The translations under genes were made by a program, and so were the position numbers. 64,000 bases of DNA from Macrostomum lignano. Taxonomy: Eukaryota. Positions 4,807-64,000 of the stretch are shown in pieces (the stretch's first letter is position 1; each line of letters opens with the position of its first letter). Location of the stretch: positions 180,345-244,344 of the forward strand of contig NIVC01001733.1 of NCBI GenBank assembly GCA_002269645.1, given 5' to 3'. The notes below the pieces were generated by a model. It saw only the letters and a list, made by a program, of their open reading frames with translations, did no database searches and was not told where the DNA came from.

Positions 4807-7046
4807 CTGATTGATTGACTGATTGACAAGCGAGAATCCTCCACCCGCCGCGCTCAGACAGTCTGAGCGGCAGGCTGGGTTCTGTGCAGACTCAACGGAT
4901 CGACATTTCCGGCTGCTACCGGGTGACGGCACTCGGCGCGCGGGGCGGTGCCACCCACCCCGACCTGTCGCCCGTTTATCCGGGCGGCCTGGGCGCCCGC
5001 GTGGTCGGCAGCTTCAGCCTGGCTGCCGGCATGGAGCTGTCAGTCGTTGTCGGCCAAGCGGGAGGCGACGCCACGCAGCCGATGGTCAACGCAGCTTCCG
5101 GCGGCGGCGGCGGGAGCTTCGTGTACCGGACGGCCGACGGCGAGCTGCTGCTGGCGGCCGGTGGCGGCGGCGGCGGCGGCAGCAAAGGCGGGCCAGGTCT
5201 GCCTGAGCCTTTTGTCGGGTTGTTTGCTGGGGCTGCGGGCGCTGCCGCCATGGACAGAGACACAGTCACAGACACAGACACAGACAGTCACAGACACAGT
5301 CACAGACACAGACACAGACAGTCAAAGACACAGCCACAGACAGTCACAGACACAGACACAGACAGTCACAGACACAGTCACAGACAGTCACAGACACAGA
5401 CACAGACAGTCACAGACACAGCCACAGACACAGCCGCAGACACAGACACAGACACAGAAACAGACACAGACACAGTCACGGACACAGACACAGACACAGA
5501 CACAGTCACTGACACAGACACAGACACTGCCACAGCCACAGATACAGACACAGCCATGAAGACAGACACAGATACAGTCACAAACACAGACACAGCCACA
5601 GTCACACATACAGACACAGTCATAGACACAGACACAGACACAGTCACAGACACAGCCACAGCCACAGACACAGACACAGACACAGACACAGACACAGTCA
5701 CAGACACAGACACAGACACAGACAGCCACAGACTCAGTAGCTCAGCGTTAAAACAGTCAAACTCTCGCCTCACAACCCCTGGTTCACAGCCAATCAGACT
5801 GCACATGCCTGACGATTAGCAATCAGTGCCACTGTACACCCTGTGTGAGCGTGTGCCATCGTACGTGTTAACTTTTAAGAAGCGCGTCTTGCCACAGAGG
5901 GCGCAAAGTACTTTCGCGACGTCAACCCCCCCCGCCGGCAGGAATCCCAGGCCAGGCGGGCCCGAACGGCGCGGACTCGTTGCCCGTCAGCGCCTCCTAC
6001 ACCGGCTTCGGCGGCAGCGGCGGCCAGCCGGGCTTCACGGACACCAGCCGGGGTAATTATCACGGCGGCCCGGGCGCCGGCTGGCTGGGCCGCGGCAACA
6101 TGACTAGGAAGTCGATTAACCACGGCGACAGGTGAGATGGAGGCATCATGGCGCACGGGTTTCCCCTTCAACAGTGTCACAGAATGCCGGCATTTCCTGA
6201 AATGCCTTATCGAAGGCGTCAGATAAGGCTGGATATCCCTTCATCATTCTCAGGAGGCTGGATATTCCTCATTATTCTCAGGAGGCTGGATATCCCTCAT
6301 CATTCTCAGGAGGCTGGATATCCCTTCATCATAGTCAGGAGGCTGGAATTCCCTTCATCATTGTCAGGAGGCTGGATTTCCCTTCATCAATGTTTGAAGG
6401 CTGGATATCCCTTCATCATTGTTTGGAGGCTGGAATTCCCTTCATCATAGTCAGGAGGCTGGAATTCCCTTCATCATAGTCAGGAGGCTGGAACTCCCTT
6501 CATCATTGTCAGGAGGCTGGATTTCCCTTCATCATAGTCAGGAGGCTGGAATTCCCTTCATCATTGTCAGGAGGCTGGATATCCCTTCATCATTGTCAGG
6601 AGGCTGGATTTCCCTTCATCATAGTCAGGAGGCTGGATTTCCCTTCATCATAGTCAGGAGGCTGGAATTCCCTTCATCATTGTCAGGAGGCTGGATTTCC
6701 CTTCATCAGTATTAGGAGGTTTGAAATTCCTATTCATCAATGCGCATCTTCGCGGACCCGCAGAGGCGGCGGTCTCGCCGAAGGCTGGGTCGGCGGCGTC
6801 GCCGGCTCGAAGAACTCCGGTGCCGTCGGCGGCTTCGGCGGGGGCGGAGGCGGCTCGCAGTCGAACGGCGCCAGCGGCGGCGGCGGCGGCTTCAGCGGCG
6901 GCGGAGCCGGGCTGTACTTTGGCTACACCGGCGGCGGCGGCGGCTCCTTTTGCGGCGGCGGCGGGTGCGCCAGCCAGACGGGCGGCAACGCGGACAGCGA
7001 CCAGGGCTCGGTGGTCTTTGAGCTCAGGGGCCTGGGCGCCTGCTGA
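3738..7046 (+). CDS. Secreted PAN/apple-like + ALK/LTK-type glycine-rich domain protein, with no TM segment or kinase
   Basis: Exons: 3738-3783 (MIERCFFCVLLICCI); 3923-4282 (SDIECAVRCRARGCSAARLSDSGRLCQLL, PAN-like); ~4858-5196 (YRVTALGARGG..GLGARVVGSFSL..VVVGQAGG..GGGGGSFV..LLLAAGGGGG); 5942-6131 (GQAGPNG..GGPGAGWLG); 6764-7046 (GGFGGGGG..GGGGGFSGG..GGGGGSF..GN..GSVVFEL, stop). All phases are compatible. The exon 3 acceptor could be at 4831 or 4858. Confidence 0.8.
4315..4826 (+). repeat. (GATT/GGTT)n microsatellite, intronic
   Basis: Direct reading. Confidence 0.95.
5255..5730 (+). repeat. (GACACA)n compound microsatellite, intronic
   Basis: Direct reading. Confidence 0.95.
6225..6720 (+). 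repeat. ~29-bp minisatellite (aggaggctggatttcccttcatcattgtc), intronic
   Basis: About 17 degenerate copies. Confidence 0.9.
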
Positions 7047-21060: not shown

Positions 21061-22109
21061 AATTGGGGGCCCGCCCGCTCGCAAAAGTCCCGGCGGTCCA
21101 AAGGGAAACGCAGCAGAAAAGAGAAAAGGTGGCAGGCGCGGCCCGGGCTGGACTGCTTTGGCTAGCTGGGGTCTGGGCTGTGTAGAGTTTGGCTACAAGG
21201 TGAAGGCCCAGATGGGGGGTGGGGCGGGGGTTGGCTGAATTCGCGCGCCGGACCTAAAAGGGCGGAAAGGAGAGAGAAATTGGGGTGGCGGGCGCTGTTC
21301 TATTTTTAGAACTCATACGCTGAATTGGGGGACGGGTTGGAGCAACCCCGCCTCCCCCTGGCGCTCACTGGCTGGGTGGGTTTCAGGGGGTGGGTTTGTG
21401 AACAGAAGGCCGGGGTTGGCGTCTGGTTCAGGCAGGAGGTTGAGGCGCAGAAGGACCGCGGGTAGTACGCAAAAACGAGAAGACAGGACAGAACATTGGG
21501 GCTGTGGAGAAGAGCAGAATAGGAATTGCGCTTGCAAAAAAGAGGCAGCTTTGGTACCCCGCTCGGGCTCAGCGGACCGCCTCCCCCTCAAACACAGCCA
21601 GTCATGAGGCCGAGGGCTGAAAGAGGACTGCGAACTAGCCGAGGGAAAACCTTATCTTGCACAAATGGAGACGCCTCTCGATGCGATTTGCCAGTTCTCC
21701 GCGCGTTTCCCCTCTTTCTCACTCTTCCTCCATTGCGCAGCGGCTTCTGCTGTTTGCAACCGAAAAGTGGCATGGCAACGTTCCGCACTTCCGAGTTCGC
21801 TTGTAAATTTAAAGCTGTTTCGAATTCGAAATTTGCGATAGTAGAGCAGTCTGCGATGCAGACCGGGCACTACCAAGGGGTGTGTGTATGAAAAATGGCA
21901 CCATTCGAACAGGCTAAAATTATACTACTAGCGTATAAAAAAGGCAATGACGCTGCGCCAGTAGGGTCGGTATGGGATTCAAATTGTGAGTCCCTTAACA
22001 AGCATCGGGGTTATGAGATGATCAATCAGTTTCGGAGAAACTGAAAGGAACTCTTGAAATATTGGCGTCACTGAATCATGATCTCCAATCTCCATCACAC
22101 TCCAATCTA

Positions 22110-23540
22110 CACTACGCACCAAGGTTGGTAGAGTCCTGAACGCCCGGCCCGTCCGCATCAGGCTGTCGAGGAAGCGCTGAGTTCGCATCCCTCCTCGCCA
22201 AGTCAGCCGTCAGCGTGAACAGTAGCCCCTCATGAGTTCCGAGTCTCATCCGGGATGATAGCCTTCCAGTTGGAGTCGCATGCGAGGATGATATTGTCAA
22301 CCTGCTGGAGTCATCGCATGCGAGGATGATAGCCTTGCATGAGGATGATGTTGTCAGCCTGCTGGAGTCATCGCATGCGAGGATGATGTCAGCCTGCTGG
22401 AGTCATCGAAGGCGCGGATGATGTTTTCAGCCAGCTGGAGTCATCGGGGACACGGATGATGTTGTCAGCCTGCTGGAGTCATCGAAGGCGCGGATGATGT
22501 TGTCAGCCTGCTAGAATCATGCGCCCAGCATCTGCTCCAGGCGAATATTAATAACTTCAATATTAACTTTTACACTGATAGCCAAGCCGCTATTAAGGCC
22601 TTAACCACTGAGAATATCTCCGCTGCTACAGTATATCAATGCCACCGCAGTGTGCAATCCCTCTCAGTCCTTAACAGGATTAGAATTATCTGGACACCCG
22701 GTCACAGCAACATCCTGGGCAACGAGCTCGCGGACTCTCTCGCCAAGGAGGGCAGCAACCCAGACGGCAACCACCGTCTGATGAGGCTACCCACTCCCAG
22801 GTCGCAAGTCACCCGCCATATCAACAGGTGGCTCCATCAGCAGCACCAGCTCCACTGGAACAGCTGCACCGAGTACAGGCAAACCCGCTCTGCCATGCCT
22901 AACCTGAACAGGAAAGTCTCTGACTATCTGATCTCGCTTAACAGAACCGACCTCAGGGAGATGTGCATGGCCCTAACCGGCCATGGATTCTTCCAGAGAC
23001 ATATCTCGTTGCAAACCGGTTGCCCTCCCACCTGTCCTTTCTGTGGCATAAGAGAGGAGACCGCGGAGCATCACGTCACTTTCTGCCCTTACTTCAACAA
23101 GGCGCGGCACAAATACCTCGGCCACCCCCAGCGGATGGACGAGCTGACCACCCCGGACAATATCCGTGACCTTCGCGCCTTCGTCCGGGACTCCGGCCGG
23201 ATGAGAGTCGCCGATGCCTCCACTGCGAACCTGCCGACTATACTGGCGGGGACTGGGCGCACCCCCAAGGTTAATCCTTGTGCTCTTTTACCTTGGAGTT
23301 GCGATAGGGGCCTCGCGGCCTATTCGCGGCGCCTGCGCCCCCCGTCAGTAGAAAGTAAGTAAGTAGAGTCATCGCATGCGAGGATGATGTTGTCAGCCTG
23401 CTGGAGTCATCGAAGGCGCGGATGATGTTTTCAGCCATCTGGAGTCATCGGTGGCGAGGATGATGTTGTCAGCCTGCTGGAGTCATCGAAGGCGCGGATG
23501 ATGTGGCCTGTAATCTGGAGTCGCCTGTAGAAAAGCAAGT
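22110..23540 (-). mobile_element. Decayed non-LTR retrotransposon 3' coding remnant with an internally amplified ~35-38-bp repeat, interrupted by a second LINE
   Basis: The minus strand reads LLFYRRLQITGHIIRA near 23530, and frameshifted RMRLQLEG..GLLFTL..RTQRFLDSL at 22280-22150. This resembles the post-RT RRRLxxxGHxxR motif. Confidence 0.4.
22521..23364 (+). mobile_element. 5'-truncated LINE (LOA/I-like): RNase H C-half + CCHC motif, (AAGT)n tail
   Basis: [34 protein letters not shown]; [19 protein letters not shown]; tail aagtaagtaagt; imperfect possible TSD agaatcat/agagtcat. Confidence 0.9.
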
Positions 23541-24029
23541 CATGCCATTTTAAAACGAATGTTTCAGACGACTAGTGGGAGCCTCATCTTCTACGCTCGT
23601 ACGACTGACCCTCAGCGACTAACTGGCAGGCCCAAATCCTCGCGAACTTCGGGCACCAGACCACTCATTAGCCGCGAAAAATGCAGCATTAGCTGGAAAC
23701 CTGCAACCCCGATGTCGTCGTCCGGCATGCAACGCTGCGAACGGTCTTCTGTGTGGTTGAGTCACAAGCACATAGGCATGCGCTCGTATAAGCACGCTGC
23801 CAAATTTCGGCAAAAGGGTAACAAATCTAACAATTCCTACTTCATTTGAAGCTCTTTATCGCCATAAAATAAGTGAAGTATATCATATATTTATTTATTA
23901 TTTATTATTACTATTAATATTATTATTATTTATTTATTATTACGAGCGTATATTAGATATTAGGCTCATTAAAATGTTAAATGGTAAAAATGTGATTGCC
24001 GTAGAACAATGTGCACTCTTTTGAGCACA

Positions 24030-25136: not shown

Positions 25137-33557
<8,421 letters not shown>

Positions 33558-47926: not shown

Positions 47927-50009
<2,083 letters not shown>

Positions 50010-50737
50010 GGCGAAGGCCAGAGGCGACTCGGGCTTGAAGGAGGTCACTTTCTGAAGGCATGAGCAGTGATGGACGATGGACGAACGATAAACGACTGCT
50101 GCTATGGCCGGACATTTCCCAAGCATGTCCTGCTGTGGGTGTCCCTTTATGGGTGTTTTGAGATTCTGTGGGTGTTTTGGGGTTTTGTGGGTATTTTGTG
50201 ATTTCTTGTGTTGTGCTCGGGTTTTAAAGCTGTTTTTTTTGTCACAAGAAGTCTCAGTCCAATCAGTCATGGGAAGATTGTGAGATTTATTATCACTAAA
50301 TGCGTCTCGCACTTTTAGCACAGTCTAACACTTTATCTCGTGACTTTATTCTCGAAAACAATGGTAACCGGGCAGCTCTGTTATTAAGTTTGTTACATGT
50401 AAAAATATTTCACAAAAATTGTTCTGCTTGATCGACCATACCTAAACTCAATGTAATTTTTATTCGACTGGAGTTTATCATGTCTGTTTCCTTAATCAGA
50501 CAAGAAAACACTTTTCAAGCTTTTCCAACGCTTTATAATAAAACAAACAGTATCCAATATTTATTTCCGGTGCAATGTCCTCACGCAGTCGTTATTTTCG
50601 GTTTGGGCGGAATTTTAAACAGCAAAAATTCTAAGAATCAGTTTAAATCTTCACTCTTTTCAGCGAGGCCTTGTGGATAATTTGCTAAAAAATCTGCGAA
50701 AAAAAAATTGCAAAATAATCAACAGAATCGTCTGAGA

Positions 50738-52742
50738 ATGTCGCGAGACAGACTGCCGGACCTGAGGCGGGCGATGGCTTTGGGGGAGGATGCTGCTCAG
50801 GTGAGAACTGCATCTGATTGACCAGTGCGACTGCTCGACAGTGGGACTGTCTGACAATGGGACTGTCTGACAATGGGACTGTCTGACAATGGAACTGTCT
50901 GATAGTGGGACTGTCTGACAATGGGACTGTCTGACAATGGGACTATCTGACAATGGGACTGTCTGATAGTGGGACTGTCTGACTATGGGACTATCTGACA
51001 ATTCTGACAATGAGACTATCTGACAATGGGACTATCTGACAATGGGACTATCTGACAATGGGACTGTCTGACAATGGGACTATCTGACAATGGGACTATC
51101 TGACAATAGGACTATCTGACAATGGGACTGTCTGACAATGGGACTATATGACAATGGGACTATCTGACAATGGGACTATCTGACAATGGGACTATCTGAC
51201 AATGGGACTATCTGACAATGGGACTATCTGACAATGGGACTATCTGACAATGGGACTATCTGACAATGGGACTATCTGACAATGGGACTATCTGACAATG
51301 GGACTATCTGACAATGGGACTGTCTGACAATGGGACTGTCTGACAGTGGGACTGTCTGACAATGGGACTATCTGACAATGGGACTGTCTGACAATGGGAC
51401 TGTCTGACAGTGGGACTGTCTGACAATGGGACTCTGCGCCTCGCAAATTCGCGCTAAGATCGTGCCAGACGAAGAAGAGCTCGGCGACGAGAACTTTTCG
51501 ATGGAACCGGACGATCAGCCGGGCAGGCGCGGAGACCCCGAGCGTTGGCAGCGGCCGCGCAACTCCGAAGGCTTCATGGACGATTTTTTCGCTGACGTCG
51601 ACGCTGTCCGTCGCCTGATTAACGAAATCGAAGCTAGCGTCTGCAGCGTCAGGATGAAGCACTCGCACATCCTGGCCTCGCCAAACAACGACCAGAGTGA
51701 GTTTCTGCGGAGTGAAATCACTCTCTAGACTCTTGACTGATCGGAGTGAACTCACTCTGGCACACCATGACTGATCTCAGTGAACTCACCCACCCTTGAG
51801 CAGGCAGTTTCTGCTTCAAATCTTCATTATTCAGGACCCAAATCCATTTGTTGCAGAAACAAAGGAAGAACTTGAAGTCCTGATGCAGAACATCAAGACC
51901 AACGCTAACAAAGTGCGAATGAAGCTCAAAGGTTCGTGGCTACTGTTTATTGGGATCATTATCCCCTCAGAGCTCATTGGGATCATTATCCCCCCGCCAC
52001 TCATTAGGATCATTATCCCCCCACCAGATTTCATTGGGATCATTAACCCCCACCAGAGATCATTGGGATCATTAAACCCCACCAGAGATCATTGGGATCA
52101 TTATCCCCCACCAGAGATCATTGGGATCATTATCCCCCACCAGATTTCATTGGTGATCATTAACCCCCCGGAGTTCATTGGGATCATTATCCCCCCAGAG
52201 TTCATTGGGATCATTATCCCCCCAGAGTTCATTGGGATCATTATCCCCCACCAGAGATCATTGGGATCATTATCCCCCACCAGATTTCATTGGTGATCAT
52301 TAACCCCCCGGAGTTCATTGGGATCATTATCACATTCATTAACAGCTGACAGTCAGGTCACATAGCAACCGACTCCCATCGAATCTCCAGCCGTTGAGCA
52401 GGGTCTTGAGCAGAGTGAGCTGTCCGACGGTGGATCCACAGCCGACGTGCGAATCCGCAAAACCCAGGTAAATTTCTGCTTTTACTGTTGCAGATTCTGA
52501 CAGAAAAACAGGAAAGAAATTAATCGGCTTTCCCGCTCAGTCCAACACAAGAGCCTCTTAAAAATTTTTGCATAAATTATTTTGCTAAAATCTCCGAAAT
52601 ACCAGAAAGTTTTAAAGCATTATTGCTTTGCAGCACTCGACAATCACGCGAAAGTTCATAGAGACAATGAGCGAGTACAACAGGGCCCAGTTGGAGTACC
52701 GCAGCGGCTGCAAGGCTCGGATTAGACGCCAGATGGAGATCA
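50738..52742 (+). CDS. STX1: Syntaxin-1 family (Qa-SNARE), 5' exons; the SNARE/TM exons were not found in the window
   Basis: Exons: 50738-50800 (MSRDRLPDL); 51459-51696 ([18 protein letters not shown]); 51857-51931 ([25 protein letters not shown]); 52391-52467 (ADVRIRKTQ); 52634-52742 ([36 protein letters not shown]). All phases are compatible. Confidence 0.93.
50830..51432 (+). repeat. 16-bp minisatellite (gggactatctgacaat), syntaxin intron 1
   Basis: Direct reading. Confidence 0.94.
51948..52332 (+). repeat. ~27-bp minisatellite (cattgggatcattatccccccagagtt), intronic
   Basis: Direct reading. Confidence 0.9.
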
Positions 52743-52884
52743 GTAATCCGAGGCTTAGTTCGATTTGGCTAGACTCCTGTGCTGACTGGTGGCGCTGGTG
52801 AAGGCAAAATATTTTACCAGATATTAGTTGCACGCTGGGCCCCTATTGGTGCGATCGTTTGGCGGTTAATTTTAATGAATTCTT

Positions 52885-53740
52885 CTCTCTCTGTGCACAC
52901 TTGATTGGACTCAGTGGCTGCCGGTTCTTATCTCTCTGTACACACTTGATTGGACTCAGTGGCTGCCGGTTCTTATCTCTCTGTACACACTTGATTGGAC
53001 TCAGTGGCTGCCGGTTCTTATCTCTCTGTACACACTTGATTGGACTCAGTGGCTGCCGGTTCTTATCTCTCTGTACACACTTGATTGGACTCAGTGGCTG
53101 CCGGTTCTTATCTCTCTGTACACACTTGATTGAACTCTATGGCTGCCGGTTCTTATCTCTCTGTACACACTTGATTGAACTCTATGGCTGCCGGTTCTTA
53201 TCTCTCTGTACACACTTGATTGAACTCTATGGCTGCCGGTTCTTATCTCTCTGTACACACTTGATTGAACTCTATGGCTGCCGGTTCTTATCTCTCTGTA
53301 CACACTTGATTGGACTCTATGGCTGCCGGTTCTTATCTCTCTGTACACACTTGATTGGACTCAGTGGCTGCCGGTTCTTATCTCTCTGTACACACTTGAT
53401 TGAACTCTATGGCTGCCGGTTCTTATCTCTCTGTGCACACTTGCACACTTGCACACTTGAACTCTATGGCTGCCGGTTCTTATCTCTCTGTACACACTTG
53501 ATTGGACTCAGTGGCTGCCGGTTCTTATCTCTCTGTACACACTTGATTGAACTCTATGGCTGCCGGTTCTTATCTCTCTGTGCACACTTGCACACTTGCA
53601 CACTTGAACTCTATGGCTGCCGGTTCTTATCTCTCTGTACACACTTGATTGGACTCTATGGCTGCCGGTTCTTATCTCTCTGTACACACTTGATTGGACT
53701 CTATGGCTGCCGGTTCTTATCTCTCTGTACACACTTGATC
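52885..53740 (+). repeat. 45-bp minisatellite (ctctctgtacacacttgattggactcagtggctgccggttcttat)
   Basis: Direct reading; explains the 15-aa periodic ORF at 52859-53902. Confidence 0.94.
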
Positions 53741-54254
53741 TCGCGTATCCCGCGTACCTCCCATATTTTACTCCGAAACACAATATTATTTAGAAAAGTG
53801 TCTATTGATAAAAATAATTTTAGTAGCCTTGTGTTCACCCGAATCTCAGTCTGGCTCAATAACAGGTATAAAAACTGGCTTCTGTTTTTGGGGGAGTGCT
53901 AGATGTCTTGGGGATCCCACTGGGGCGCTGAGCTGCAGAAGAGCGTCATAAAAAGCTTGCAGCAGGCACCAGGCTGAACTGAATGCCTGCGTGCCAAACT
54001 GCTGAAGCCTCAATTTGATTGACTGCACTATTCGATGTGGCCGCTTGTTGAGTGACGCCCCACTTCGCTTCCAGTGACTTGTCGTTGCATTATTAATTTG
54101 CACGTCAGCCGATTGCAGAAAAATCCAATCAAAAGTGTCAGTTGAAAGTGAAATTTTAAATCATTTTCAGCAGCTGCTCAGATATCTTAGAGACCTAACT
54201 CGTTCCCCACCTCTCTCTCAGACCTCTCTCCAGGTCTCCCTCCCTCCGATTTCT

Positions 54255-54672
54255 GCGTCAGATCTCTCTGCATCAGATCTCTCATAAGATCTCTCATCAG
54301 ATCTCTCATCAGATCTCTCATCAGATCTCTCATCAAATCTCTCATCAGATCTCTCATGAGATCTCTCATCAGATCTCTCATCAAATCTCTCATCAGATCT
54401 CTCATCAGATCTCTCATCAGATCTCTCATCAGATCTCTCATCAAATCTCTCATCAGATCTCTCATGAGATCTCTCTCATCAAATCTCTCATCAGATCTCT
54501 CATCAGATCTCTCATCAGATCTCTCATCAGATCTCTCATCAGATCTCTCATGAGATCTCTCTCATCAAATCTCTCATCAAATCTCTCATCAGATCTCTCA
54601 TCAGATCTCTCATCAGATCTCTCATCAGATCTCTCATCAGATCTCTCATGAGATCTTTCATCAGCTCTCTCA
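54255..54672 (+). repeat. 12-bp repeat (tcagatctctca)
   Basis: Direct reading. Confidence 0.93.
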
Positions 54673-54763
54673 GATCCTCGCAGAGGATACCTACTGACAT
54701 GCAGAGCTTCTCTAGTGAAGCCGTCAGTCAGAGCAGCGCGGCCCGCACCCACCGCAATTCCAG

Positions 54764-54872
54764 CACCTGACGCTTTCCCGCAAATTTGTGGACGCCATCA
54801 GCCGCTACAACGCCTGCCAGATCGCCTTCAGGCAGGGCTGCAAGGCGAAGATTTCTCGCCATTTAGCGCTCA
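54764..54872 (+). CDS. STX1: Duplicated alternative syntaxin exon (B), homologous to 52634-52742
   Basis: ttccag/CAC..CTC A/gtaag; HLTLSRKFVDAISRYNACQIAFRQGCKAKISRHLAL; 109 nt with the same phases (0 to 1) as exon A. Confidence 0.85.
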
Positions 54873-55215
54873 GTAAGAAAGCTGCTCTGCGAGCTCGTGG
54901 CTTTGAGCTTGAGAAGCATTCAGGCTTGTGCCCGCTCGAATCTTGATTGTTTGTTGCATTGCACGGTGCTTTGTTATTTTTATGCCTTGTTGTGGCTTTG
55001 GGGCAGCACATTCTGTTGTTAACAGGCGCCCGCCCAGCCATTTGTCAACAATACTGAGTGCTCGCGAACTACAGAGCTTGAAAAAAATTTGAGAATTGAC
55101 TTCTGCTGCTAGAAGAAATCTTTATGGCTATTTCCGCTGCTTGAGGACCGTTCTTCTGGTATAAAAGAAAATGTTTCCGCTCGTCTGTCTTTTTTTCTGC
55201 TTCGAACTTGCTATA

Positions 55216-58200
55216 TCCTATATACTAAAAATGAGTTGTCTGTGGGTATGCGATAGATTTCAGAAAAAATGGCTCAACCGATTTTCTTCAAACTTGCACC
55301 ATTCGATCAGAAATTCTCCTGGGACGGTACATGCATCTTGGCTAAGAAATTGCTATATATTAAAGGGATTAAATATTCGAAAAACATGCTTTTTTGCAAA
55401 GGTCAAGCAAAATTTTCGACTTGAAATGCATTGTAAGAATGCTAGAGAAAAAACTGACTGGCTGAATTTCAATTCTGATAAAGATTGCATCACAACAAGT
55501 AGAAAACAGTGCCGAAGAAATGCACACACGACTTGATTTAAATTGCGTAACCAATATTGCTAACTTGAATTGAAACTGATACTGGCTGACTGAGAAATTG
55601 ATTTTGTCATAACTTTTTACTCTAATTGACTTGCTGTAAGAATTGAATTATAAGGGCCACAATTGATGTACTCCAATTGAAAAGAGATAGCCCAGATGCG
55701 AACAGACTGGAATGCTAATGTAGCGACCTGGGTTCGAATCTTAGTAGTGCAAAATAATTTTTTTATTAAAACACCTTGAAAACATGAAACTGCTAAACAT
55801 AAAAGAAGCACAATGTCAAACATATCAGTGGCACCATGTCGAACATTAAAGAGCCACCATGCCAAACATAAACGAGCCACCATGTCAAGCATTAAAAAGC
55901 CACCATGTCAAACATATTTGTGACTCCATGTAAAACATATATACGTGACTCCATGTCAAACATAAAAGAGCCACCATGTCAAACGTAAAAGAACCGACAT
56001 GTTGAACATTAAAGAGCCACCATGTCAAACGTAAAAGAACCACCATGTCGAACTTTAAAGAGCCACCATGTCAAACGTAAAAGAACCGACATGTCGAACA
56101 TTAAAGAGCCACCATGTCAAACATTAAAGAGCCACCATGTCAAAAATTAAAGAGCCACTTTGTCATACTTAAAAGAGCCACCATGTCAAACATTAAAGAG
56201 CTACCATGTCAAACATAAAAAAGCCACCATGTCAAACTTTAAAGAGCCACCACGTCGAACGTGAAAAAGCCACCATGTCAAGCATAAAAGAGCCACCATG
56301 TCTAACAATAAAGAACCACTTTTTCGAACATTAAACAGCCACCATGTCAAATGTAAAAGAACCGACATGTCGAACATTAAAGAGCCACGATGTCAAACAT
56401 TAAAGAGCCACCATGTCAAAAATTAAAGAGCCACTTTGTCATACTTAAAAGAGCCACCATGTCGAACATTAAAGAGCTACCATGTCAAACATAAAAAAGC
56501 CACCATGTCAAACTTTAAAGAGCCACCACTTCGAACGTGAAAAAGCCACCATGTCAAACATAAAAGAGCCACCATGTCTAACAATAAAGAACCACCATGT
56601 CGAACATTAAAGAGCTACCATGTCAAGCATAAAAGAGCCGACATGTCGAAAATTAAAGAGCTACCATGTCAAACATTAACGAGCCACCATGTCAAACATT
56701 AAAGAGCCACTTTGTCGAAAATTAAAGAGCTACCATGTCAAACATAAAAGAGCCAACATGTCGAAAATTAAAGAGCCACCATGTCAAACGTAAAAGAACC
56801 ACCATGTCGAACATTTAAGAGCTACAATGTCAAACATTTAAGAGCCACCATGTCAAACGTAAAAGAACCACCATGTCGAACATTTAAGAGCTACAATGTC
56901 AAACATTAAAGAGCCACCATGTCAAACATTAAAGAGCCACCATGTCAAACATAAAGGAGCCACTTTTTCGAACATTAAAGAGCCACCACGTTGAACATTA
57001 AAGAGCCACCATGTCGAACATTAAAGAACCACCATGTCAAACATTAAAGAGCCACCATGTCAAATAATAAAGAGCCACCATGTCAAACATTTAAGAGCCA
57101 CCATGAAAAAAATTTAAAGAGCCACCATGTCTAACATTAAAGAGCCACCATGTCCAACATGCAACATTAAAGAGCCACCATGTCCAACATATATGTGACT
57201 CCATGTCGAACATTAAAGAGCCACCATGTCGAACGTTAAAGAGCCACCATGTCGAACATAAAAGAGCCACCATGTAAAACATTAAAGAGCCACCATGTCT
57301 AACATTAAAGAGCCACCATGTCGAACGTTAAAGAGCCACCATGTCAAACATTAACGAGTCACCATGTCAAGCGTATACGTGACTCCATGTCAAACATTAA
57401 AGAGCCATCATTTCAGACATTAAAGTGTCACCATGTCGAACATTAAAAAGCCACCATGTCCAACATTAAAGAGCCACCATGTCTAACATATATGTGACTC
57501 CAAGTCGAACATTAAAGAGCCACCATGTCCAACATGCAACATTAAAGAGCCACCATGTCCAACATATATGTGACTCCATGTCGAACATTAAAGAGCCACC
57601 ATGTCGAACGTTAAAGAGCCACCATGTCGAACATAAAGAGCCACCATGTAAAACATTAAAGAGCCACCATGTCTAACATTAAAGAGCCACCATGTCGAAC
57701 GTTAAAGAGCCACCATGTCAAACATTAACGAGTCACCATGTCAAGCGTATACGTGACTCCATGTCAAACATTAAAGAGCCATCATTTCAGACATTAAAGT
57801 GTCACCATGTTGAACGTTAAAGAGCCACCATGTCGAACATTAAAGAGCCACCATGTAAAGCATATATGTGACTCCATGCCAAATATATACATGACTCCAT
57901 GTCTAACACATACATGACTCCATGTCAAACATTAAAGAGCCACCCTGTCGAACGTTAAAGAGCCACAATGTAGAACATTAAAGAGCCACCATGTCGAACG
58001 TTAAAGAGCCACCATGTCGAACATTAAAGAGCCACTTTGTCAAACATAGAAGAGCCACCATGTCAAACATAGAAGAGCCACCATGTCAGACATTGGAAGC
58101 CACCGTATCAAACATAAAAGAGTTACCATGTTGAACAAAAAAGAGCCACAATGTAGAACATAAAAGAGCCACCCTGTTAAACATAAAATATACACAATTT

Positions 58201-58669
58201 CAAATGTAAAAGTAAGTGAATTTTAAAGGAGCCGCTATAATGCTAAAGAAATTGTCGCACTAGCTACTTATTGTCTGGTGGATGCTTGCTATTTGGGGAT
58301 GCTATCTATCTTGGGATGCTTGCTATCTGGGGGATGCTTGCTATCTGGGGATGCTTGCTATCTGGGGGATGCTTGCTATCTGGGGGATGCTTGCTATCTG
58401 GGGGATGCTTGCTATCTGGGGATGCTTGCTATCTGGGGGATGCTTGCTATCTGGGGATGCTTGCTATCTGGGGGATGCTTGCTATCTGGGGGATGCTTAC
58501 TATCTGGGGGATGCTTGCTGTCTTGCGATGATTTCTTTTTGCATTGCACTTCATTTGAGTATTTTGTCTGTTTTCTTTGTGAAGGCTTTATTTCGCTATT
58601 TTTTGTTACTTACTTGTAGAGAACAGAGACTCTATATAGATGTCCCCCAACGGGGGCAAAGATTGCTAG
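55216..58669 (+). mobile_element. Non-autonomous Helitron-like unit 1 with internal ~23-bp satellite
   Basis: 5' A/TCCTATATACTAAAAATGAG..; 3' hairpin ccccc-aac-ggggg then CTAG/T; internal array of aaagagccaccatgtcgaacatt (~55800-58190) and a 17-bp array (58270-58520). Confidence 0.75.
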
Positions 58670-61600
58670 TCCTATATACTAAAAATGAGTTGTCTGTATG
58701 TATGTATGTATATGGGTATGCGATTGATTTCAGAAAAAACGGCTCAACCGATTTTCTTCAAACTTGCATCATTCGATCAGAAATTTTCCTGGCACAGTAC
58801 ATGCATCTTGGCTAAGAAATTGCTCAATGTTAAAGGGATTAAATATTCGAAAAACACGCTTTTTTGCAAAGGTCAAGCAAAATTTTCGACTTGAAATGCA
58901 TTGTAAGAATGCTAGAGAAAAAACTGACTGACTGAATTTCAATTCTGATAAAGATTGCATCACAACAAGTTGAAAACAGTGCCGAAGAAATGCACACACG
59001 ACTTGATTGAAATTGCGTAACCATATTGCTAACTCGAAGTGAGACTGATACTGGCTGACTGAGAAATTGATTATGTCATAACTTTTTACTCCAATTGACT
59101 TGCTGTAAGAATTGAATTATAAGGGCCACAATTCATGTTCTCCAATTGAAAAGAGATAGCCCTGATGCGAACAGACTGGAATGCTAATGTAGCGACCTGG
59201 GTTCGAGTCTTAGAAGCGCAAAATAATTTTTTTATTAAAACACCTTAAAAACTAAAAACTGCTAAACATAAAAAAGCGCAATAGAAGAGCCACCATGTCA
59301 AACCTAAAGGAGCCACCATGTCGAACATTAAAGAACCACCATGTCGAACATAAAAGAGCCACCATATCGAACATAAAAGAGTTACCATGTTAAAAATTAA
59401 AGAGCCACCATGTCGAACATAGAAGAGCCACCATGTCGAACATAGAAGAGCCACCATGTCAAACATTAAAGAGCCACCATATCAAACATAAAAGAGTTAC
59501 CATGTCAAACATTAAAGAGCCACATTGTCAAGCATTAAAGACCCACCATTTCAAACCTAAAATAGTTACCATGTCAAACATTCAATAGCCACCATGTCAA
59601 ACATTAAAGAGCCACCATGTCGAACATAAAAGAGCCACCATATTAAACATAAAAGAGTTACCATGTCAAACATTAAAGAGCCACCATGTCGAACATTAAA
59701 GAGCCACCATGTCAAACATTAAAGAGCCACATTGTCAAGCATTAAAGACCCACCATTTCAAACCTAAAAGAGCCACCATGTCAAACATTAAAGAGCCACC
59801 ATGTCGAACATTAAAGAGCCACCTTGTCAAATATTAAAGAGCCACCATTTCAAACCTAAAGAAGCCACCATGTCGAACATACAAGAGCCACCATGTCGAA
59901 CATAGAAAAGCCACCATGTCAAACATTAAAGTCACCATGTCAAACATTAAAGAGCCACCGTTTCAAACCTAAAAGAGCCACCATGTTAAAAATTAAAGAG
60001 CCACCATGTCAAACATAAAACAGACACCATTAAGAACATTAAAGAGCCACCATGTCAAATATTAAAACAGCCACCATTTCGAAAATTAAGGAGCCACCAT
60101 TTCAAAAATTTAAGAGCCGCTATGTTAAACATTAAAGGGCCACCTTGTCAAATATTAAAGAGCCACCATTTCAAACTAAAAGAGCGACCCTGTCGAACAT
60201 ACAAGAGCCACCATGTCGAACATAAAAGAGCCACCATGTCGAACATACAAGAGCCACCATGTCGAACATAGAAAAGCCACCATGTCGAACATAGAAAAGC
60301 CACCATGTTAAACATTAAAGAGCCAATATTTCAAACCTAAAGGAGCCACCATGTCGAACATAAAAGAGTCACCATGTTAAAAATTAAAGAGCCACCATGT
60401 CGAACATTAAAGAGCCACCATTTCAAACATTAAAGAGCCACCATGTCAAACATTAAAGAGCCACCGGTTCAAACCTAAAAGAGCCACCATGTCGAACATT
60501 AAAGAGCCACCATGTCAAACATAAAACAGACACCATGTCAAACATTAAAGAGCCACCATGTCAAACATTAAAGAGCCACCATGTCAAACCTAAAAGAGCC
60601 ACCATGTCGAACATTAAAAAGCCACCATGTCAAACATTAAAGAGCCACATTGTCAAACATTAAAAAGCCACCATTTCAAACCTAAAAGAGCCACCATGTC
60701 AAACATTAAAGAGCCACCATGTCAAACATTAAAGAGCCACCTTGTCAAATATTAAAGAGCCATTTCAAACTAAAGAAGCCACCATGTCGAACATACAAGA
60801 GCCACCATGTCGAACATTAAAGAGCCACCATATCAAACATAAAAGAGTTACCATGTCAAACATTAAAGAGCCACCATGTCAAACATTAAAGAGCCACCAT
60901 GTCGAACATAAAAGAGCCACCATATCAAACATAAAGAGTTACCATGTCAAACATTAAAGAGCCACCATGTCGAACATTAAAGAGCCACCATGTCAAACAT
61001 TAAAGAGCCACCTTGTCAAATATTAAAGAGCCACCATGTCGAACATAAAAGAGCCACCATATCAAACATAAAAGAGTTACCATGTCAAACATTAAAGAGC
61101 CACATTGTCAAGCATTAAAGACCCACCATTTCAAACCTAAAATAGTTACCATGTCAAACATTCAATAGCCACCATGTCAAACATTAAAGAGCCACCATGT
61201 CGAACATAAAAGAGCCACCATATTAAACATAAAAGAGTTACCATGTCAAACATTAAAGAGCCACCATGTCGAACATTAAAGAGCCACCATGTCAAACATT
61301 AAAGAGCCACATTGTCAAGCATTAAAGACCACCATTTCAAACCTAAAGAGCCACCATGTCAAACATTAAAGAGCCACCATGTCGAACATTAAAGAGCCAC
61401 CTTGTCAAATATTAAAGAGCCACCATTTCAAACCTAAAGAAGCCACCATGTCAAACCTAAAAGAGCCACCATGTCAAAATTAAAGAGCCACCATGTCAAA
61501 CATTAAAGAGTCACCATGTAAAACATTAAAGAGCCACCATGTCAAATATAAAACAGCCACCATTTCGAAAATTAAAGAGCCACCATGTCAAAATAAGAGC

Positions 61601-64000
61601 CCATTTAAACATTAAAGGGCCACCATTGTCAAATATTAAAGAGCCACCATTTCAAACCTTAAAGAGCCACCTGTCAAATAAAGAGCCACCATGTTAAACA
61701 TAAAAGAGCCACCTGTCGAACATACAAGAGCCACCATGTCGAACATAGAAAGAGCCACCATGTCGAACATAGAAAAGCCACCATGTCGAAACATAAAAGA
61801 GCCAATATTTCAAACCTAAAGGAGCCACCATGTCGAACATAAAAGAGTCACCATGTTAAAAATTAAAGAGCCACCATGTCGAACATTAAAGAGCCACCAT
61901 TTCAAACATTAAAGAGCCACCATGTCAAACATTAAAGAGCCACCGGTTCAAACCTAAAAGAGCCACCATGTCGAACATTAAAGAGCCACCATGTCAAACA
62001 TAAACAGACACCATGTCAAACATTAAAGAGCCACCATGTCAAACATTAAAGAGCCACCGGTTCAAACCTAAAAGAGCCACCATGTCGAACATTAAAAAGC
62101 CACCATGTCAAACATTAAAGAGCCACATTGTCAAACATTAAAAAGCCACCATTTCAAACCTAAAAGAGCCACCATGTCAAACATTAAAGAGCCACCATGT
62201 CAAACATTAAAGAGCCACCTTGTCAAATATTAAAGAGCCACCATTTCAAACCTAAAGAAGCCACCATGTCGAACATACAAGAGCCACTATGTCGAACATT
62301 AAAGAGCCACCATATCAAACATAAAAGAGTTACCATGTCAAACATTAAAGAGCCACCATGTCAAACATTAAAGAGCCACCATGTCGAACATAAAAGAGCC
62401 ACCATATCAAACATAAAAGAGTTACCATGTCAAACATTAAAGAGCCACCATGTCGAACATTAAAGAGCCACCATGTCAAACATTAAAGAGCCACCTTGTC
62501 AAATATTAAAGAGCCACCATTTCAAACCTAAAAGAGCCACCATGTCGAACATTAAAGAGCCACCTTGTCAAATATTAAAGAGCACCATTTCAAACCTAAA
62601 GAAGCCACCATGTCGAACATACAAGAGCCACCATGTCGAACATAAAAGCCACCATATCAAACATAAAAGAGCCACCATGTCGAACATAAAAGAGCAACCA
62701 TGTCAAACATAAAACAGACACCATTAAGAACATTAAAGAGCCACCATGTCGAACATTAAAGAGCCACCATGTCAAATATAAAACAGCCACCATTTCGAAA
62801 ATTTAAGAGCCGCCATGTTAAACATTAAAGGGCCACCTTGTCAAATATTAAGAGCCCATTTCAAACCTAAAAGAGCGACCCTGTCGAACATACAAGAGCC
62901 ACAATGTCGAACATAAAGAGCAGCTATGTAGAACATAAAAGAGCCACCATGTCAAACATAAAAAAGCCACCATGTCAAACATAAAAGAGCCAACATGAAG
63001 AACATTAAAGAGCCACCATGTCGACCATTAAAAGAGCCACCATGTCGAACATACAAGAGCCACCATGTCGAACATAGAAAAGCCACCATGTCGAACATAG
63101 AAAAGCCACCATGTTAAACATTAAAGAGCCAATATTTCAAACCTTAAGGAGCACCATGTCGAACATAAAAGAGTCACCATGTTAAAATTAAAGAGCCACC
63201 ATGTCGAACATTAAAGAGCCACCATGTCGAACATTAAAGAGCCACCATGTCAAACATAAACAGACACCATGTCAAACATTAAAGAGCCACCGGTTCAAAC
63301 CTAAAAGAGCCACCATGTCGAACATTAAAGAGCCACCTTGTCAAATATTAAAGAGCCACCATTTCAAACCTAAAGGAGCCACCATGTCGAACATTAAAAA
63401 GCACCATGTCGAACATTAAAAAGCCAACATGTCAAACATAAAAGAGCCACCATGTCAAACCTAAAAAAGCCACCATGTCAAACATAGAAGAGCCACCATG
63501 TCAAACATAATAGAGCCACCATGTCAAACATTAAAGAGCCACCATGTCAAACATAGAAGAGCCACTATGTCAAACATAAAAGAGCCACCATGTCGAACAT
63601 AAAAGAGTCACCATGTTAAAAATTAAAGAGCCACCATGTCGAACATTAAAGAGCCACCATGTCGAACATTAAAAGCCACCATGTCGAACATTAAAGAGCC
63701 ACCATATCAAACATAAAAGAGTTACCATGTCAAACATTAAAGAGCCACATGTCGAACATTAAAGAGCACCATATCAAACATAAAACAGACACCATGTCAA
63801 ACATTAAAGAGCCACATGTCGAACATTAAAGAGCCACCATGTCAACATAAAACAGCCACCATTTCGAAAATTAAGGAGCCACCATTTCGAAATTAAAGAG
63901 CGCCATGTTAACCATTAAAGGCCACCATGTCAAACATTAAAGAGCCCCATGTCGAACATAAAAGAGCACCATGTCGAACATTAAAGAGCCACCATGTCAA
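58670..64000 (+). mobile_element. Helitron-like unit 2, head-to-tail with unit 1, running off the window
   Basis: Starts with TCCTATATACTAAAAATGAG immediately after the CTAG of unit 1; about 600 bp closely similar to 55216-55800; followed by more than 4.7 kb of the same satellite. Confidence 0.75.

What the first reader, a model, noticed from the sequence alone, without database searches (positions are those of the whole stretch)
52634..54872. Tandemly duplicated, probably mutually exclusive exons in the syntaxin Habc (Hc helix) region
Seen: exon A (52634-52742) and exon B (54764-54872) are both exactly 109 nt, have phase 0 to 1 and canonical AG/GT, and encode homologous but diverged peptides ([36 protein letters not shown] vs HLTLSRKFVDAISRYNACQIAFRQGCKAKISRHLAL). 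Including both would shift the frame, which is the classic signature of mutually exclusive exons. Known: Hc and the following linker take part in the closed conformation and Munc18 binding. Inference: an isoform switch that tunes syntaxin opening. The exons are separated by two minisatellite arrays.
Basis: partly seen in the sequence, partly recalled or inferred. Interest (0 to 1): 0.75.

Follow-up and report, generated by a model that had tools for sequence, protein, structure and literature searches.

The report
Ancient alternative exon pair in syntaxin-1
A flatworm syntaxin-1 gene carries two interchangeable 109-base versions of one exon, and this pair is an old, conserved feature of syntaxin-1 in worms, molluscs and their relatives, so the finding is real but is a new example of something already annotated in other species.

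Summary
Exons A (52634-52742) and B (54764-54872) are both 109 nt with AG/GT sites and phase 0 to 1, they encode the peptides quoted, and two minisatellites lie between them.

The window is from a macrostomid flatworm (97% match to a Macrostomum lignano syntaxin fragment). The gene is a divergent syntaxin-1 paralogue whose linker, SNARE and TMD exons lie beyond the window end.

A and B are not a local novelty. They are orthologues of an ancient "M-type/L-type" exon pair. I found it in the same order, always 109 nt, in an M. lignano paralogue (where the L-exon is unannotated), an annelid and a brachiopod. RefSeq isoforms of Lineus and Octopus differ in exactly this segment, as do two otherwise identical transcript contigs.

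Exon B has evolved under purifying selection as strong as exon A (dN/dS 0.13 vs 0.12). In the complete paralogue, including both exons or neither gives premature stops.

The mutually-exclusive reading is therefore well supported by comparison, but I found no transcript containing this locus's exon B. The proposed effect on syntaxin opening remains inference. The exon does include R151 and I155, the Munc13 docking residues. I found no paper describing this exon pair.

The parts
50738..50800 (+). Exon 1 of the syntaxin-1-like gene (ATG; [21 protein letters not shown], the N-peptide with the DRL motif), donor GTGAGA
   Evidence: The start codon and donor were read from the sequence; assignment as the first coding exon is inferred from similarity to MTKDRL... 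N-termini.
51459..51696 (+). Exon 2 (Ha helix; ...[41 protein letters not shown]). The 3' end is firm; the 5' acceptor is the most plausible of several in-frame AGs.
51857..51931 (+). Exon 3 (75 nt; [25 protein letters not shown]), the same length as exon 3 of the M. lignano paralogue
52391..52467 (+). Exon 4 (77 nt; [26 protein letters not shown]), ends in phase 0. This is the shared upstream exon for A and B.
52634..52742 (+). Exon 5a = 'A', M-type Hc/linker exon (109 nt, ...RQMEI). This is the version present in the only known Macrostomum protein of this locus type (P0014).
52880..53739 (.). Intronic minisatellite, 45-bp unit x 18.6 copies
   Evidence: The unit is confined to this array.
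54265..54672 (.). Intronic minisatellite, 12-bp unit TCTCTCATCAGA x 33.6 copies, ending 91 nt upstream of exon B
   Evidence: The unit is confined to this array.
54764..54872 (+). Exon 5b = 'B', L-type Hc/linker exon (109 nt, TLSRKFV...YNACQI...RHLAL), unannotated in any database protein
55795..64000 (.). Downstream intron, almost entirely a 23-bp minisatellite (about 357 copies) running off the window. The remaining exons (linker, SNARE motif, TMD) are not in the window.

Best explanation
Exons A and B are the flatworm orthologues of an ancient pair of mutually exclusive exons in lophotrochozoan syntaxin-1. I call them M-type (...TISRKFIE...AQ.DYR..CK.RI.RQMEI) and L-type ([34 protein letters not shown]). 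Each encodes residues equivalent to human STX1A 120-155: the C-terminal two-thirds of helix Hc and the first residues of the Habc-SNARE linker. Splicing exon 4 to either A or B and then to the next exon gives an in-frame syntaxin. Because each exon is 109 nt (109 mod 3 = 1), including both or neither shifts the frame and produces a premature stop, so only single-inclusion mRNAs are productive. Shown: the anatomy, the orthology, purifying selection on both exons, the frame logic, and alternative use of the pair in other species. Inferred: that exon B is actually spliced in this particular gene, and that the two isoforms differ in closed-state stability or in Munc18/Munc13-dependent opening.
For: Anatomy. 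One gene only: no other syntaxin exon lies between or after A and B. Family fit: Pfam Syntaxin scores 125.9 bits with A, 117.5 with B and 66.2 with neither. Orthologous pairs, all 109 nt, AG/GT, order M then L: M. lignano paralogue L002 (M 26146-26254, unannotated L 27998-28106), Dimorphilus L004 and Lingula L005. Isoform evidence: Lineus X5 vs X2/4/6/7/8 and Octopus P0036 vs P0048 differ only in this segment or in separate C-terminal exons. Transcript-sized contigs P0077 (L) and P0029 (M) are otherwise identical. P0141 is a genomic read-through ORF with M then L. Selection: winB vs L002-L dN/dS 0.13 with dS about 1.4; winA vs L002-M 0.12. B is 69% identical to its orthologous exon, the same as A and within the 54-72% range of the constitutive exons. 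Tree: M clade including window A 75% bootstrap, window B + L002-L 86%, A+B as sisters 1.5%. Distribution: of 137 proteins, M-type occurs only in lophotrochozoans and L-type occurs everywhere. Frame logic in the complete paralogue: M-only and L-only give 308 aa, M+L stops at aa 179, neither stops at aa 160, and both stops lie more than 50 nt upstream of the last junction. Function lead: R151 and I155, which PMC13398699 reports as important for Munc13 MUN binding and syntaxin opening, are positions 32 and 36 of the exon.
Against: No protein among 5.8 billion shares even three 5-mers with exon B, and the exhaustive HMMER search returned no Macrostomum B-type sequence. There is therefore no transcript evidence for B at this locus. 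The only database protein of this locus type, P0014, uses A. One M. lignano paralogue (L001) and Schistosoma have lost the L exon, and every neodermatan protein retrieved is M-type, so loss happens in flatworms. dN/dS averages over the whole time since the paralogues split, so recent disuse of B cannot be excluded. The downstream exons are outside the window. No regulatory element (docking/selector pairing or conserved intronic block) was found.
Confidence: 0.82

Rival explanations
1. Exon B is a recently silenced relic (pseudo-exon) in this fast-evolving paralogue. Exon A is constitutive and B is never spliced in.
For: No B-containing protein or transcript was found. P0014 uses A. The L exon has been lost in paralogue L001 and in neodermatans. 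B deviates from the L consensus at several otherwise invariant positions, 20-21/36 identical to Dimorphilus and Lingula L versus 26-29/36 for L002-L.
Against: B has exact 109-nt length, an open frame and intact AG/GT sites despite dS of about 1.4 from its orthologue. dN/dS is 0.13, equal to exon A. Its divergence matches A and the constitutive exons. B adds about 51 bits to the Pfam Syntaxin score. The derived K.KI.RHLAL ending is shared with L002-L.
Confidence: 0.1
2. A and B arose by a recent, Macrostomum-specific tandem exon duplication that is unrelated to the isoform pairs of other phyla.
For: Tandem duplication of this exon may be recurrent. A rotifer model (P0132) contains two L-like copies.
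Against: A+B are sisters in only 1.5% of bootstrap replicates. A groups with M exons and B with L exons. B carries the diagnostic TLSRKFV and YNACQI motifs. The order M then L is the same in four phyla. dS between A and B is saturated and their flanks are unalignable.
Confidence: 0.03
3. Exon B belongs to a separate, adjacent syntaxin paralogue or to a fragment of one.
For: M. lignano has several syntaxin-1 paralogues.
Against: No homologues of exons 1-4 lie between A and B, and no downstream syntaxin exons follow A before B. The 2-kb interval is two minisatellites plus unique non-coding sequence. The same two-exon arrangement sits inside single genes in L002, L004 and L005.
Confidence: 0.02
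4. B is used, but not as a simple swap. For example, it could be coupled to different downstream exons or a different 3' end, giving a structurally different product, or A+B double inclusion could serve as a regulated unproductive (NMD) switch.
For: The downstream part of the gene is unseen. Lineus shows combinatorial use of several alternative regions. In the window, A+B read-through has no stop inside B.
Against: In every species with isoform data the two exons are simple substitutes within otherwise identical proteins. In L002 the L-only model is a full 308-aa syntaxin.
Confidence: 0.03

Closest known systems
Syntaxin isoforms of Lineus longissimus (X5 vs X2/X4/X6-X8) and Octopus vulgaris (P0036 vs P0048) in RefSeq, and the same exon pair in the Dimorphilus, Lingula and M. 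lignano Mlig016078 genes
   Same: The same gene family and the same 36-residue segment. The exons are 109 nt in the same order, M then L (shown at DNA level for Dimorphilus, Lingula and M. lignano L002), with the same diagnostic residues. Window A is orthologous to M and window B to L.
   Different: The window gene is a faster-evolving paralogue. Its B exon, like L002-L, has a derived ending, K.KI.RHLAL instead of RIQRQLEI. B is unannotated and has no transcript evidence here.
SNAP-25 exon 5a/5b (vertebrates; PMC2581893)
   Same: An ancient tandem exon duplication in a neuronal t-SNARE that gives two mutually exclusive, closely similar isoforms (abstract listed).
   Different: A different SNARE protein and a different lineage (vertebrates).
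C-terminal alternative exons of syntaxins (C. elegans unc-64 exon 8a/8b, PMC4946901; my own knowledge: vertebrate STX2/STX3 variants)
   Same: Alternative exons within syntaxin genes, regulated by tissue. Lineus and M. lignano L002 also have alternative TMD exons.
   Different: Those exons change the transmembrane anchor or the C-terminal SNARE half, not the Habc/linker. I found no published example in the Hc region.
Squid s-syntaxin N-terminal domain structure (PDB 1S94) and vertebrate syntaxin-1A structures (3C98, 4JEH, 7UDB)
   Same: They give structural context for both exon types: 1S94 contains an M-type segment, and the vertebrate chains are L-type.
   Different: These are single isoforms. 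The two types have never been compared within one species' protein, as far as I found.

Membership tests
Syntaxin-1 / plasma-membrane Qa-SNARE | N-terminal Habc three-helix domain (Pfam PF00804 Syntaxin) | tested here: met
   125.9 bits with exon A and 117.5 bits with exon B, against a cut-off of 26.7.
Syntaxin-1 / plasma-membrane Qa-SNARE | Qa SNARE motif and C-terminal transmembrane anchor | not testable with these tools
   These exons lie beyond the window end. P0014, the 97%-identical M. lignano fragment, has both (PF05739).
Syntaxin-1 / plasma-membrane Qa-SNARE | N-peptide (M..DRL...) that binds Sec1/Munc18 proteins | tested here: inconclusive
   Exon 1 encodes [12 protein letters not shown], resembling the MTKDRLAAL of its relatives. 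Binding was not tested.
Mutually exclusive exon cluster from tandem exon duplication | Adjacent exons that are homologous to each other | tested here: met
   16/36 residues and 59% of nucleotides are shared, and both hit STX1A residues 119-157.
Mutually exclusive exon cluster from tandem exon duplication | Same length, same phases, canonical splice sites | tested here: met
   109 nt, phase 0 to 1, AG/GT.
Mutually exclusive exon cluster from tandem exon duplication | Joint inclusion or joint skipping is unproductive | tested here: met
   109 mod 3 = 1. In the complete paralogue L002, M+L stops at aa 179 and neither stops at aa 160. In the window, A+B shifts the frame.
Mutually exclusive exon cluster from tandem exon duplication | Transcripts contain exactly one of the exons | not testable with these tools
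   No RNA data are available for this locus, and no B-containing protein is in the databases. The feature is met in other species: Lineus and Octopus isoforms and the P0077/P0029 transcripts.
Mutually exclusive exon cluster from tandem exon duplication | Both copies maintained by purifying selection | tested here: met
   dN/dS is 0.13 for B and 0.12 for A against the orthologous exons of L002.
Lophotrochozoan syntaxin-1 M/L exon pair | M-type exon first and L-type second, with diagnostic residues (I4/A18/M34 vs L4/C18/L34) | tested here: met
   Window A has I4, A18, M34. Window B has L4, C18, L34. The order is as in L002, L004 and L005.

The most novel reading that the evidence does not exclude
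The M/L Hc-linker exon switch is a syntaxin-1 regulatory device conserved across at least five lophotrochozoan phyla, and apparently undescribed in the literature. By changing residues next to the Munc13-docking site (R151/I155) and along Hc, it would produce isoforms with different closed-state stability or different Munc18/Munc13-dependent priming, deployed in different cell types. Macrostomum keeps it in at least two paralogues, with a lineage-specific rewrite of the L-type ending (RQLEI to RHLAL).
Probability: 0.3. Interest if true: 0.6.

Novelty: new member of a known kind. Interest (0 to 1): 0.42.

Why it matters
Syntaxin-1 opening is the regulated step of synaptic vesicle priming, and most of what is known about the Hc/linker region comes from engineered mutants. 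This is a naturally occurring pair of alternative Hc/linker modules. It has been kept in syntaxin-1 genes of at least five phyla (platyhelminths, annelids, brachiopods, nemerteans, molluscs), and it covers the residues reported to dock Munc13. The classical invertebrate preparations are affected too: the solved squid structure 1S94 and the cloned leech syntaxin are both the M-type isoform. If the isoforms differ in opening or chaperone dependence, they offer an evolution-tested handle on that mechanism. For genome annotation, the result shows that the L-type exon is missing from current Macrostomum gene models.

Tried and rejected
1. A protein search with exon B plus short flanks found no candidate at all. 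A first attempt failed because 36 aa is below the minimum query length. The exhaustive HMMER search with exon B returned only L-type exons of other animals.
2. Looking up P0014's genomic locus, and the Lineus (P0028, P0045) and Octopus (P0048) isoforms, gave nothing on record. The Octopus gene (P0036) spans 302 kb and could not be fetched.
3. I considered whether exon B's '...LAL' ending mimics the 'LE' open mutation (L165A/E166A). Rejected: by alignment numbering the exon covers residues 120-155, so L165/E166 lie in the next exon.
4. I looked for competing RNA structures (docking/selector) and conserved intronic elements. Only the exons are conserved between the window and L002, and the inverted repeats found are internal to the minisatellites or are 15-nt chance-level matches.
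5. I considered whether the pyrimidine-rich 12-bp array upstream of B acts as a splicing-regulator platform. There is no support: 36% of the window is minisatellite (23 arrays longer than 300 bp), nearly every intron of this gene has one, and no similarity to the window's intron arrays was found in the L002 introns.
6. I looked for a third exon copy or downstream syntaxin exons in the window and found none.
7. Literature searches for a described Hc-region exon pair in syntaxin found nothing relevant.
Full report
**1. Observation**

The sequence is as described. Exon A (52634-52742) and exon B (54764-54872) are each 109 nt. They are bounded by AG and GT and translate to the two quoted 36-residue peptides plus one extra base. 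Tandem Repeats Finder confirms the two arrays between them: 45 bp x 18.6 copies and 12 bp x 33.6 copies. A and B share 16/36 residues and 59% of nucleotides. dS is about 1.1, and the flanking introns are unalignable, so the duplication is old.

**2. The gene and its source**

The upstream exons are e1 50738-50800 (ATG, MSRDRL...), e2 about 51459-51696, e3 51857-51931 and e4 52391-52467. Exon 4 ends in phase 0. Downstream of B the window is almost entirely a 23-bp minisatellite, and no linker, SNARE or TMD exon is present. The gene therefore runs off the window.

The closest database protein is a Macrostomum lignano fragment, P0014 (UniRef100_A0A1I8HJ20). It is 97% identical over exon 4 plus exon A and continues with TGRQTT..., a SNARE motif and a TMD. 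The window is thus from M. lignano or a close relative. The gene is a divergent paralogue of the canonical M. lignano syntaxin-1 genes P0024 and P0025.

**3. What A and B are**

RefSeq isoforms of one gene in Lineus longissimus and in Octopus vulgaris differ in exactly this 36-residue segment:

| Species | M-type isoform | L-type isoform |
|---|---|---|
| Lineus | [36 protein letters not shown] | [36 protein letters not shown] |
| Octopus | P0036 | P0048 |

Two transcript-sized contigs, P0029 (M) and P0077 (L), are otherwise identical.

Among 137 syntaxins classified, M-type occurs only in lophotrochozoans (annelids, molluscs, nemerteans, flatworms). L-type occurs in all bilaterians sampled.

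At the DNA level I found the pair in three other genes. Each exon is exactly 109 nt with AG/GT sites, and M always comes before L:

| Locus | Species | M exon | L exon |
|---|---|---|---|
| L002 | M. lignano paralogue Mlig016078 | 26146-26254 | 27998-28106 (unannotated) |
| L004 | Dimorphilus gyrociliatus (annelid) | 4999-5107 | 5846-5954 |
| L005 | Lingula anatina (brachiopod) | 21962-22070 | 22345-22453 |

P0141, a genomic read-through ORF from another species, shows M, then a short intron, then L.

A neighbour-joining tree of the 36-residue segments places window A inside the M clade (75% bootstrap). It places window B with the L002 L-exon (86%). A+B appear as sisters in 1.5% of replicates. 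Window B and L002-L share a derived ending, K.KI.RHLAL in place of RIQRQLEI.

**4. Is exon B functional?**

- **Selection.** Against its orthologue in L002, exon B has dN/dS 0.13 at dS of about 1.4. Exon A has 0.12.
- **Divergence.** B is 69% identical to its orthologue. That equals A and falls within the 54-72% range of the constitutive exons, so B is not decaying faster than the rest of this fast-evolving gene.
- **Family fit.** B adds about 51 bits to the Pfam Syntaxin score and A adds about 60.

Direct evidence is lacking. No protein among 5.8 billion shares three 5-mers with B, and the exhaustive HMMER search found no Macrostomum B-type sequence. Loss of the L exon does happen in flatworms: paralogue L001 and Schistosoma have none, with scores below shuffled controls, and all neodermatan proteins retrieved are M-type.

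**5. Mechanism of exclusivity**

109 mod 3 = 1. I rebuilt the complete paralogue L002 exon by exon. M-only and L-only both give a 308-aa syntaxin. M+L stops at residue 179, and skipping both stops at residue 160. Both stops lie more than 50 nt upstream of the last junction, so these transcripts are expected NMD substrates. In the window, A+B shifts the frame.

I found no conserved intronic element and no docking/selector pairing. Minisatellites occupy 36% of the whole window, so the two arrays between A and B are a genomic habit and not evident regulators.

**6. Function (inferred)**

By alignment the exon corresponds to human STX1A 120-155: the C-terminal part of Hc and the start of the linker. 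Positions 32 and 36 are R151 and I155, reported as important for Munc13 MUN binding and syntaxin-1 opening (PMC13398699).

M and L differ consistently at a few positions: 1 Y/H, 2 S/A, 4 I/L, 18 A/C and 34 M/L. Window B keeps R151 but has Q152H, E154A and I155L. The LE motif (165/166) lies in the next exon and is not affected.

Solved structures include an M-type example (squid 1S94) and L-type examples (vertebrate 3C98, 4JEH, 7UDB). The hypothesis that the switch modulates the closed state or chaperone-driven opening is reasonable but untested.

**7. Novelty**

The pair is present in other species' RefSeq isoforms, so the kind is known to databases. I found no paper describing it. The published precedents are the SNAP-25 5a/5b exons and the C-terminal syntaxin exons. 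For Macrostomum, the L-type exons in the window and in L002 are unannotated. I rate this as a new member of a known kind, of moderate interest.

Noticed in passing
window 48000-50010 (+): The upstream neighbour looks like the 3' part of a protein-kinase gene: HLDLKPDN and DFG motifs are readable around 49200-49300, and the stop is at about 50008. One intron (about 49388-49633) consists almost entirely of a (CTAA)n microsatellite.
   Followed up: no
window 1-64000: 36% of the window lies in tandem arrays with period 8 or more (23 arrays longer than 300 bp). Of the syntaxin introns seen, only the short e2-e3 and e4-A introns lack a large array, and each of the five units checked is confined to its own array.
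   Followed up: partly
window 55200-55790 and 58660-59280: A unique segment of about 600 bp is duplicated within the giant 23-bp minisatellite (55795-64000, about 357 copies). Towards the window end the repeat units show many single-base deletions, which may be long-read assembly errors.
   Followed up: no
L002 36133-36228: A second TMD-like exon (QKKIIMIICLIVLLCIVGGLVAGFVPKG) lies about 3.3 kb downstream of the annotated last exon of M. lignano Mlig016078. This suggests unannotated alternative C-terminal exons, like unc-64 8a/8b.
   Followed up: no
L001 14580-18676; L003 2612-5352: M. lignano paralogue Mlig011532 and Schistosoma rodhaini have the M exon but no detectable L exon. All neodermatan proteins retrieved are M-type, so the L exon has been lost repeatedly in flatworms.
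   Followed up: yes
L005 20875-24403: In the Lingula assembly the M/L exon block occurs twice, the two copies being 100% identical on either side of an N gap (22847-23603); exons 3-4 are also present twice. This is most likely an assembly artefact.
   Followed up: partly
P0132 (Rotaria sp.): A bdelloid rotifer syntaxin model (343 aa) reads through an intron and contains two L-like copies of this segment. Tandem duplication of this exon may therefore be older (Spiralia-wide) or recurrent.
   Followed up: no
P0028, P0032, P0044, P0045, P0053, P0054 (Lineus longissimus): Lineus syntaxin isoforms combine three independent alternative regions: the Hc exon (2 forms), the C-terminal SNARE half (2 forms) and the TMD (at least 3 forms).
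   Followed up: no
P0073 (L006-L008, metatranscriptome contigs SRR3745356, JGI 3300019149, ERR15316848): A spliced transcript from an unidentified, flatworm-like organism uses an L-type exon ending ...CKGKIKRHLEI, intermediate between the general L consensus and the Macrostomum RHLAL ending.
   Followed up: partly
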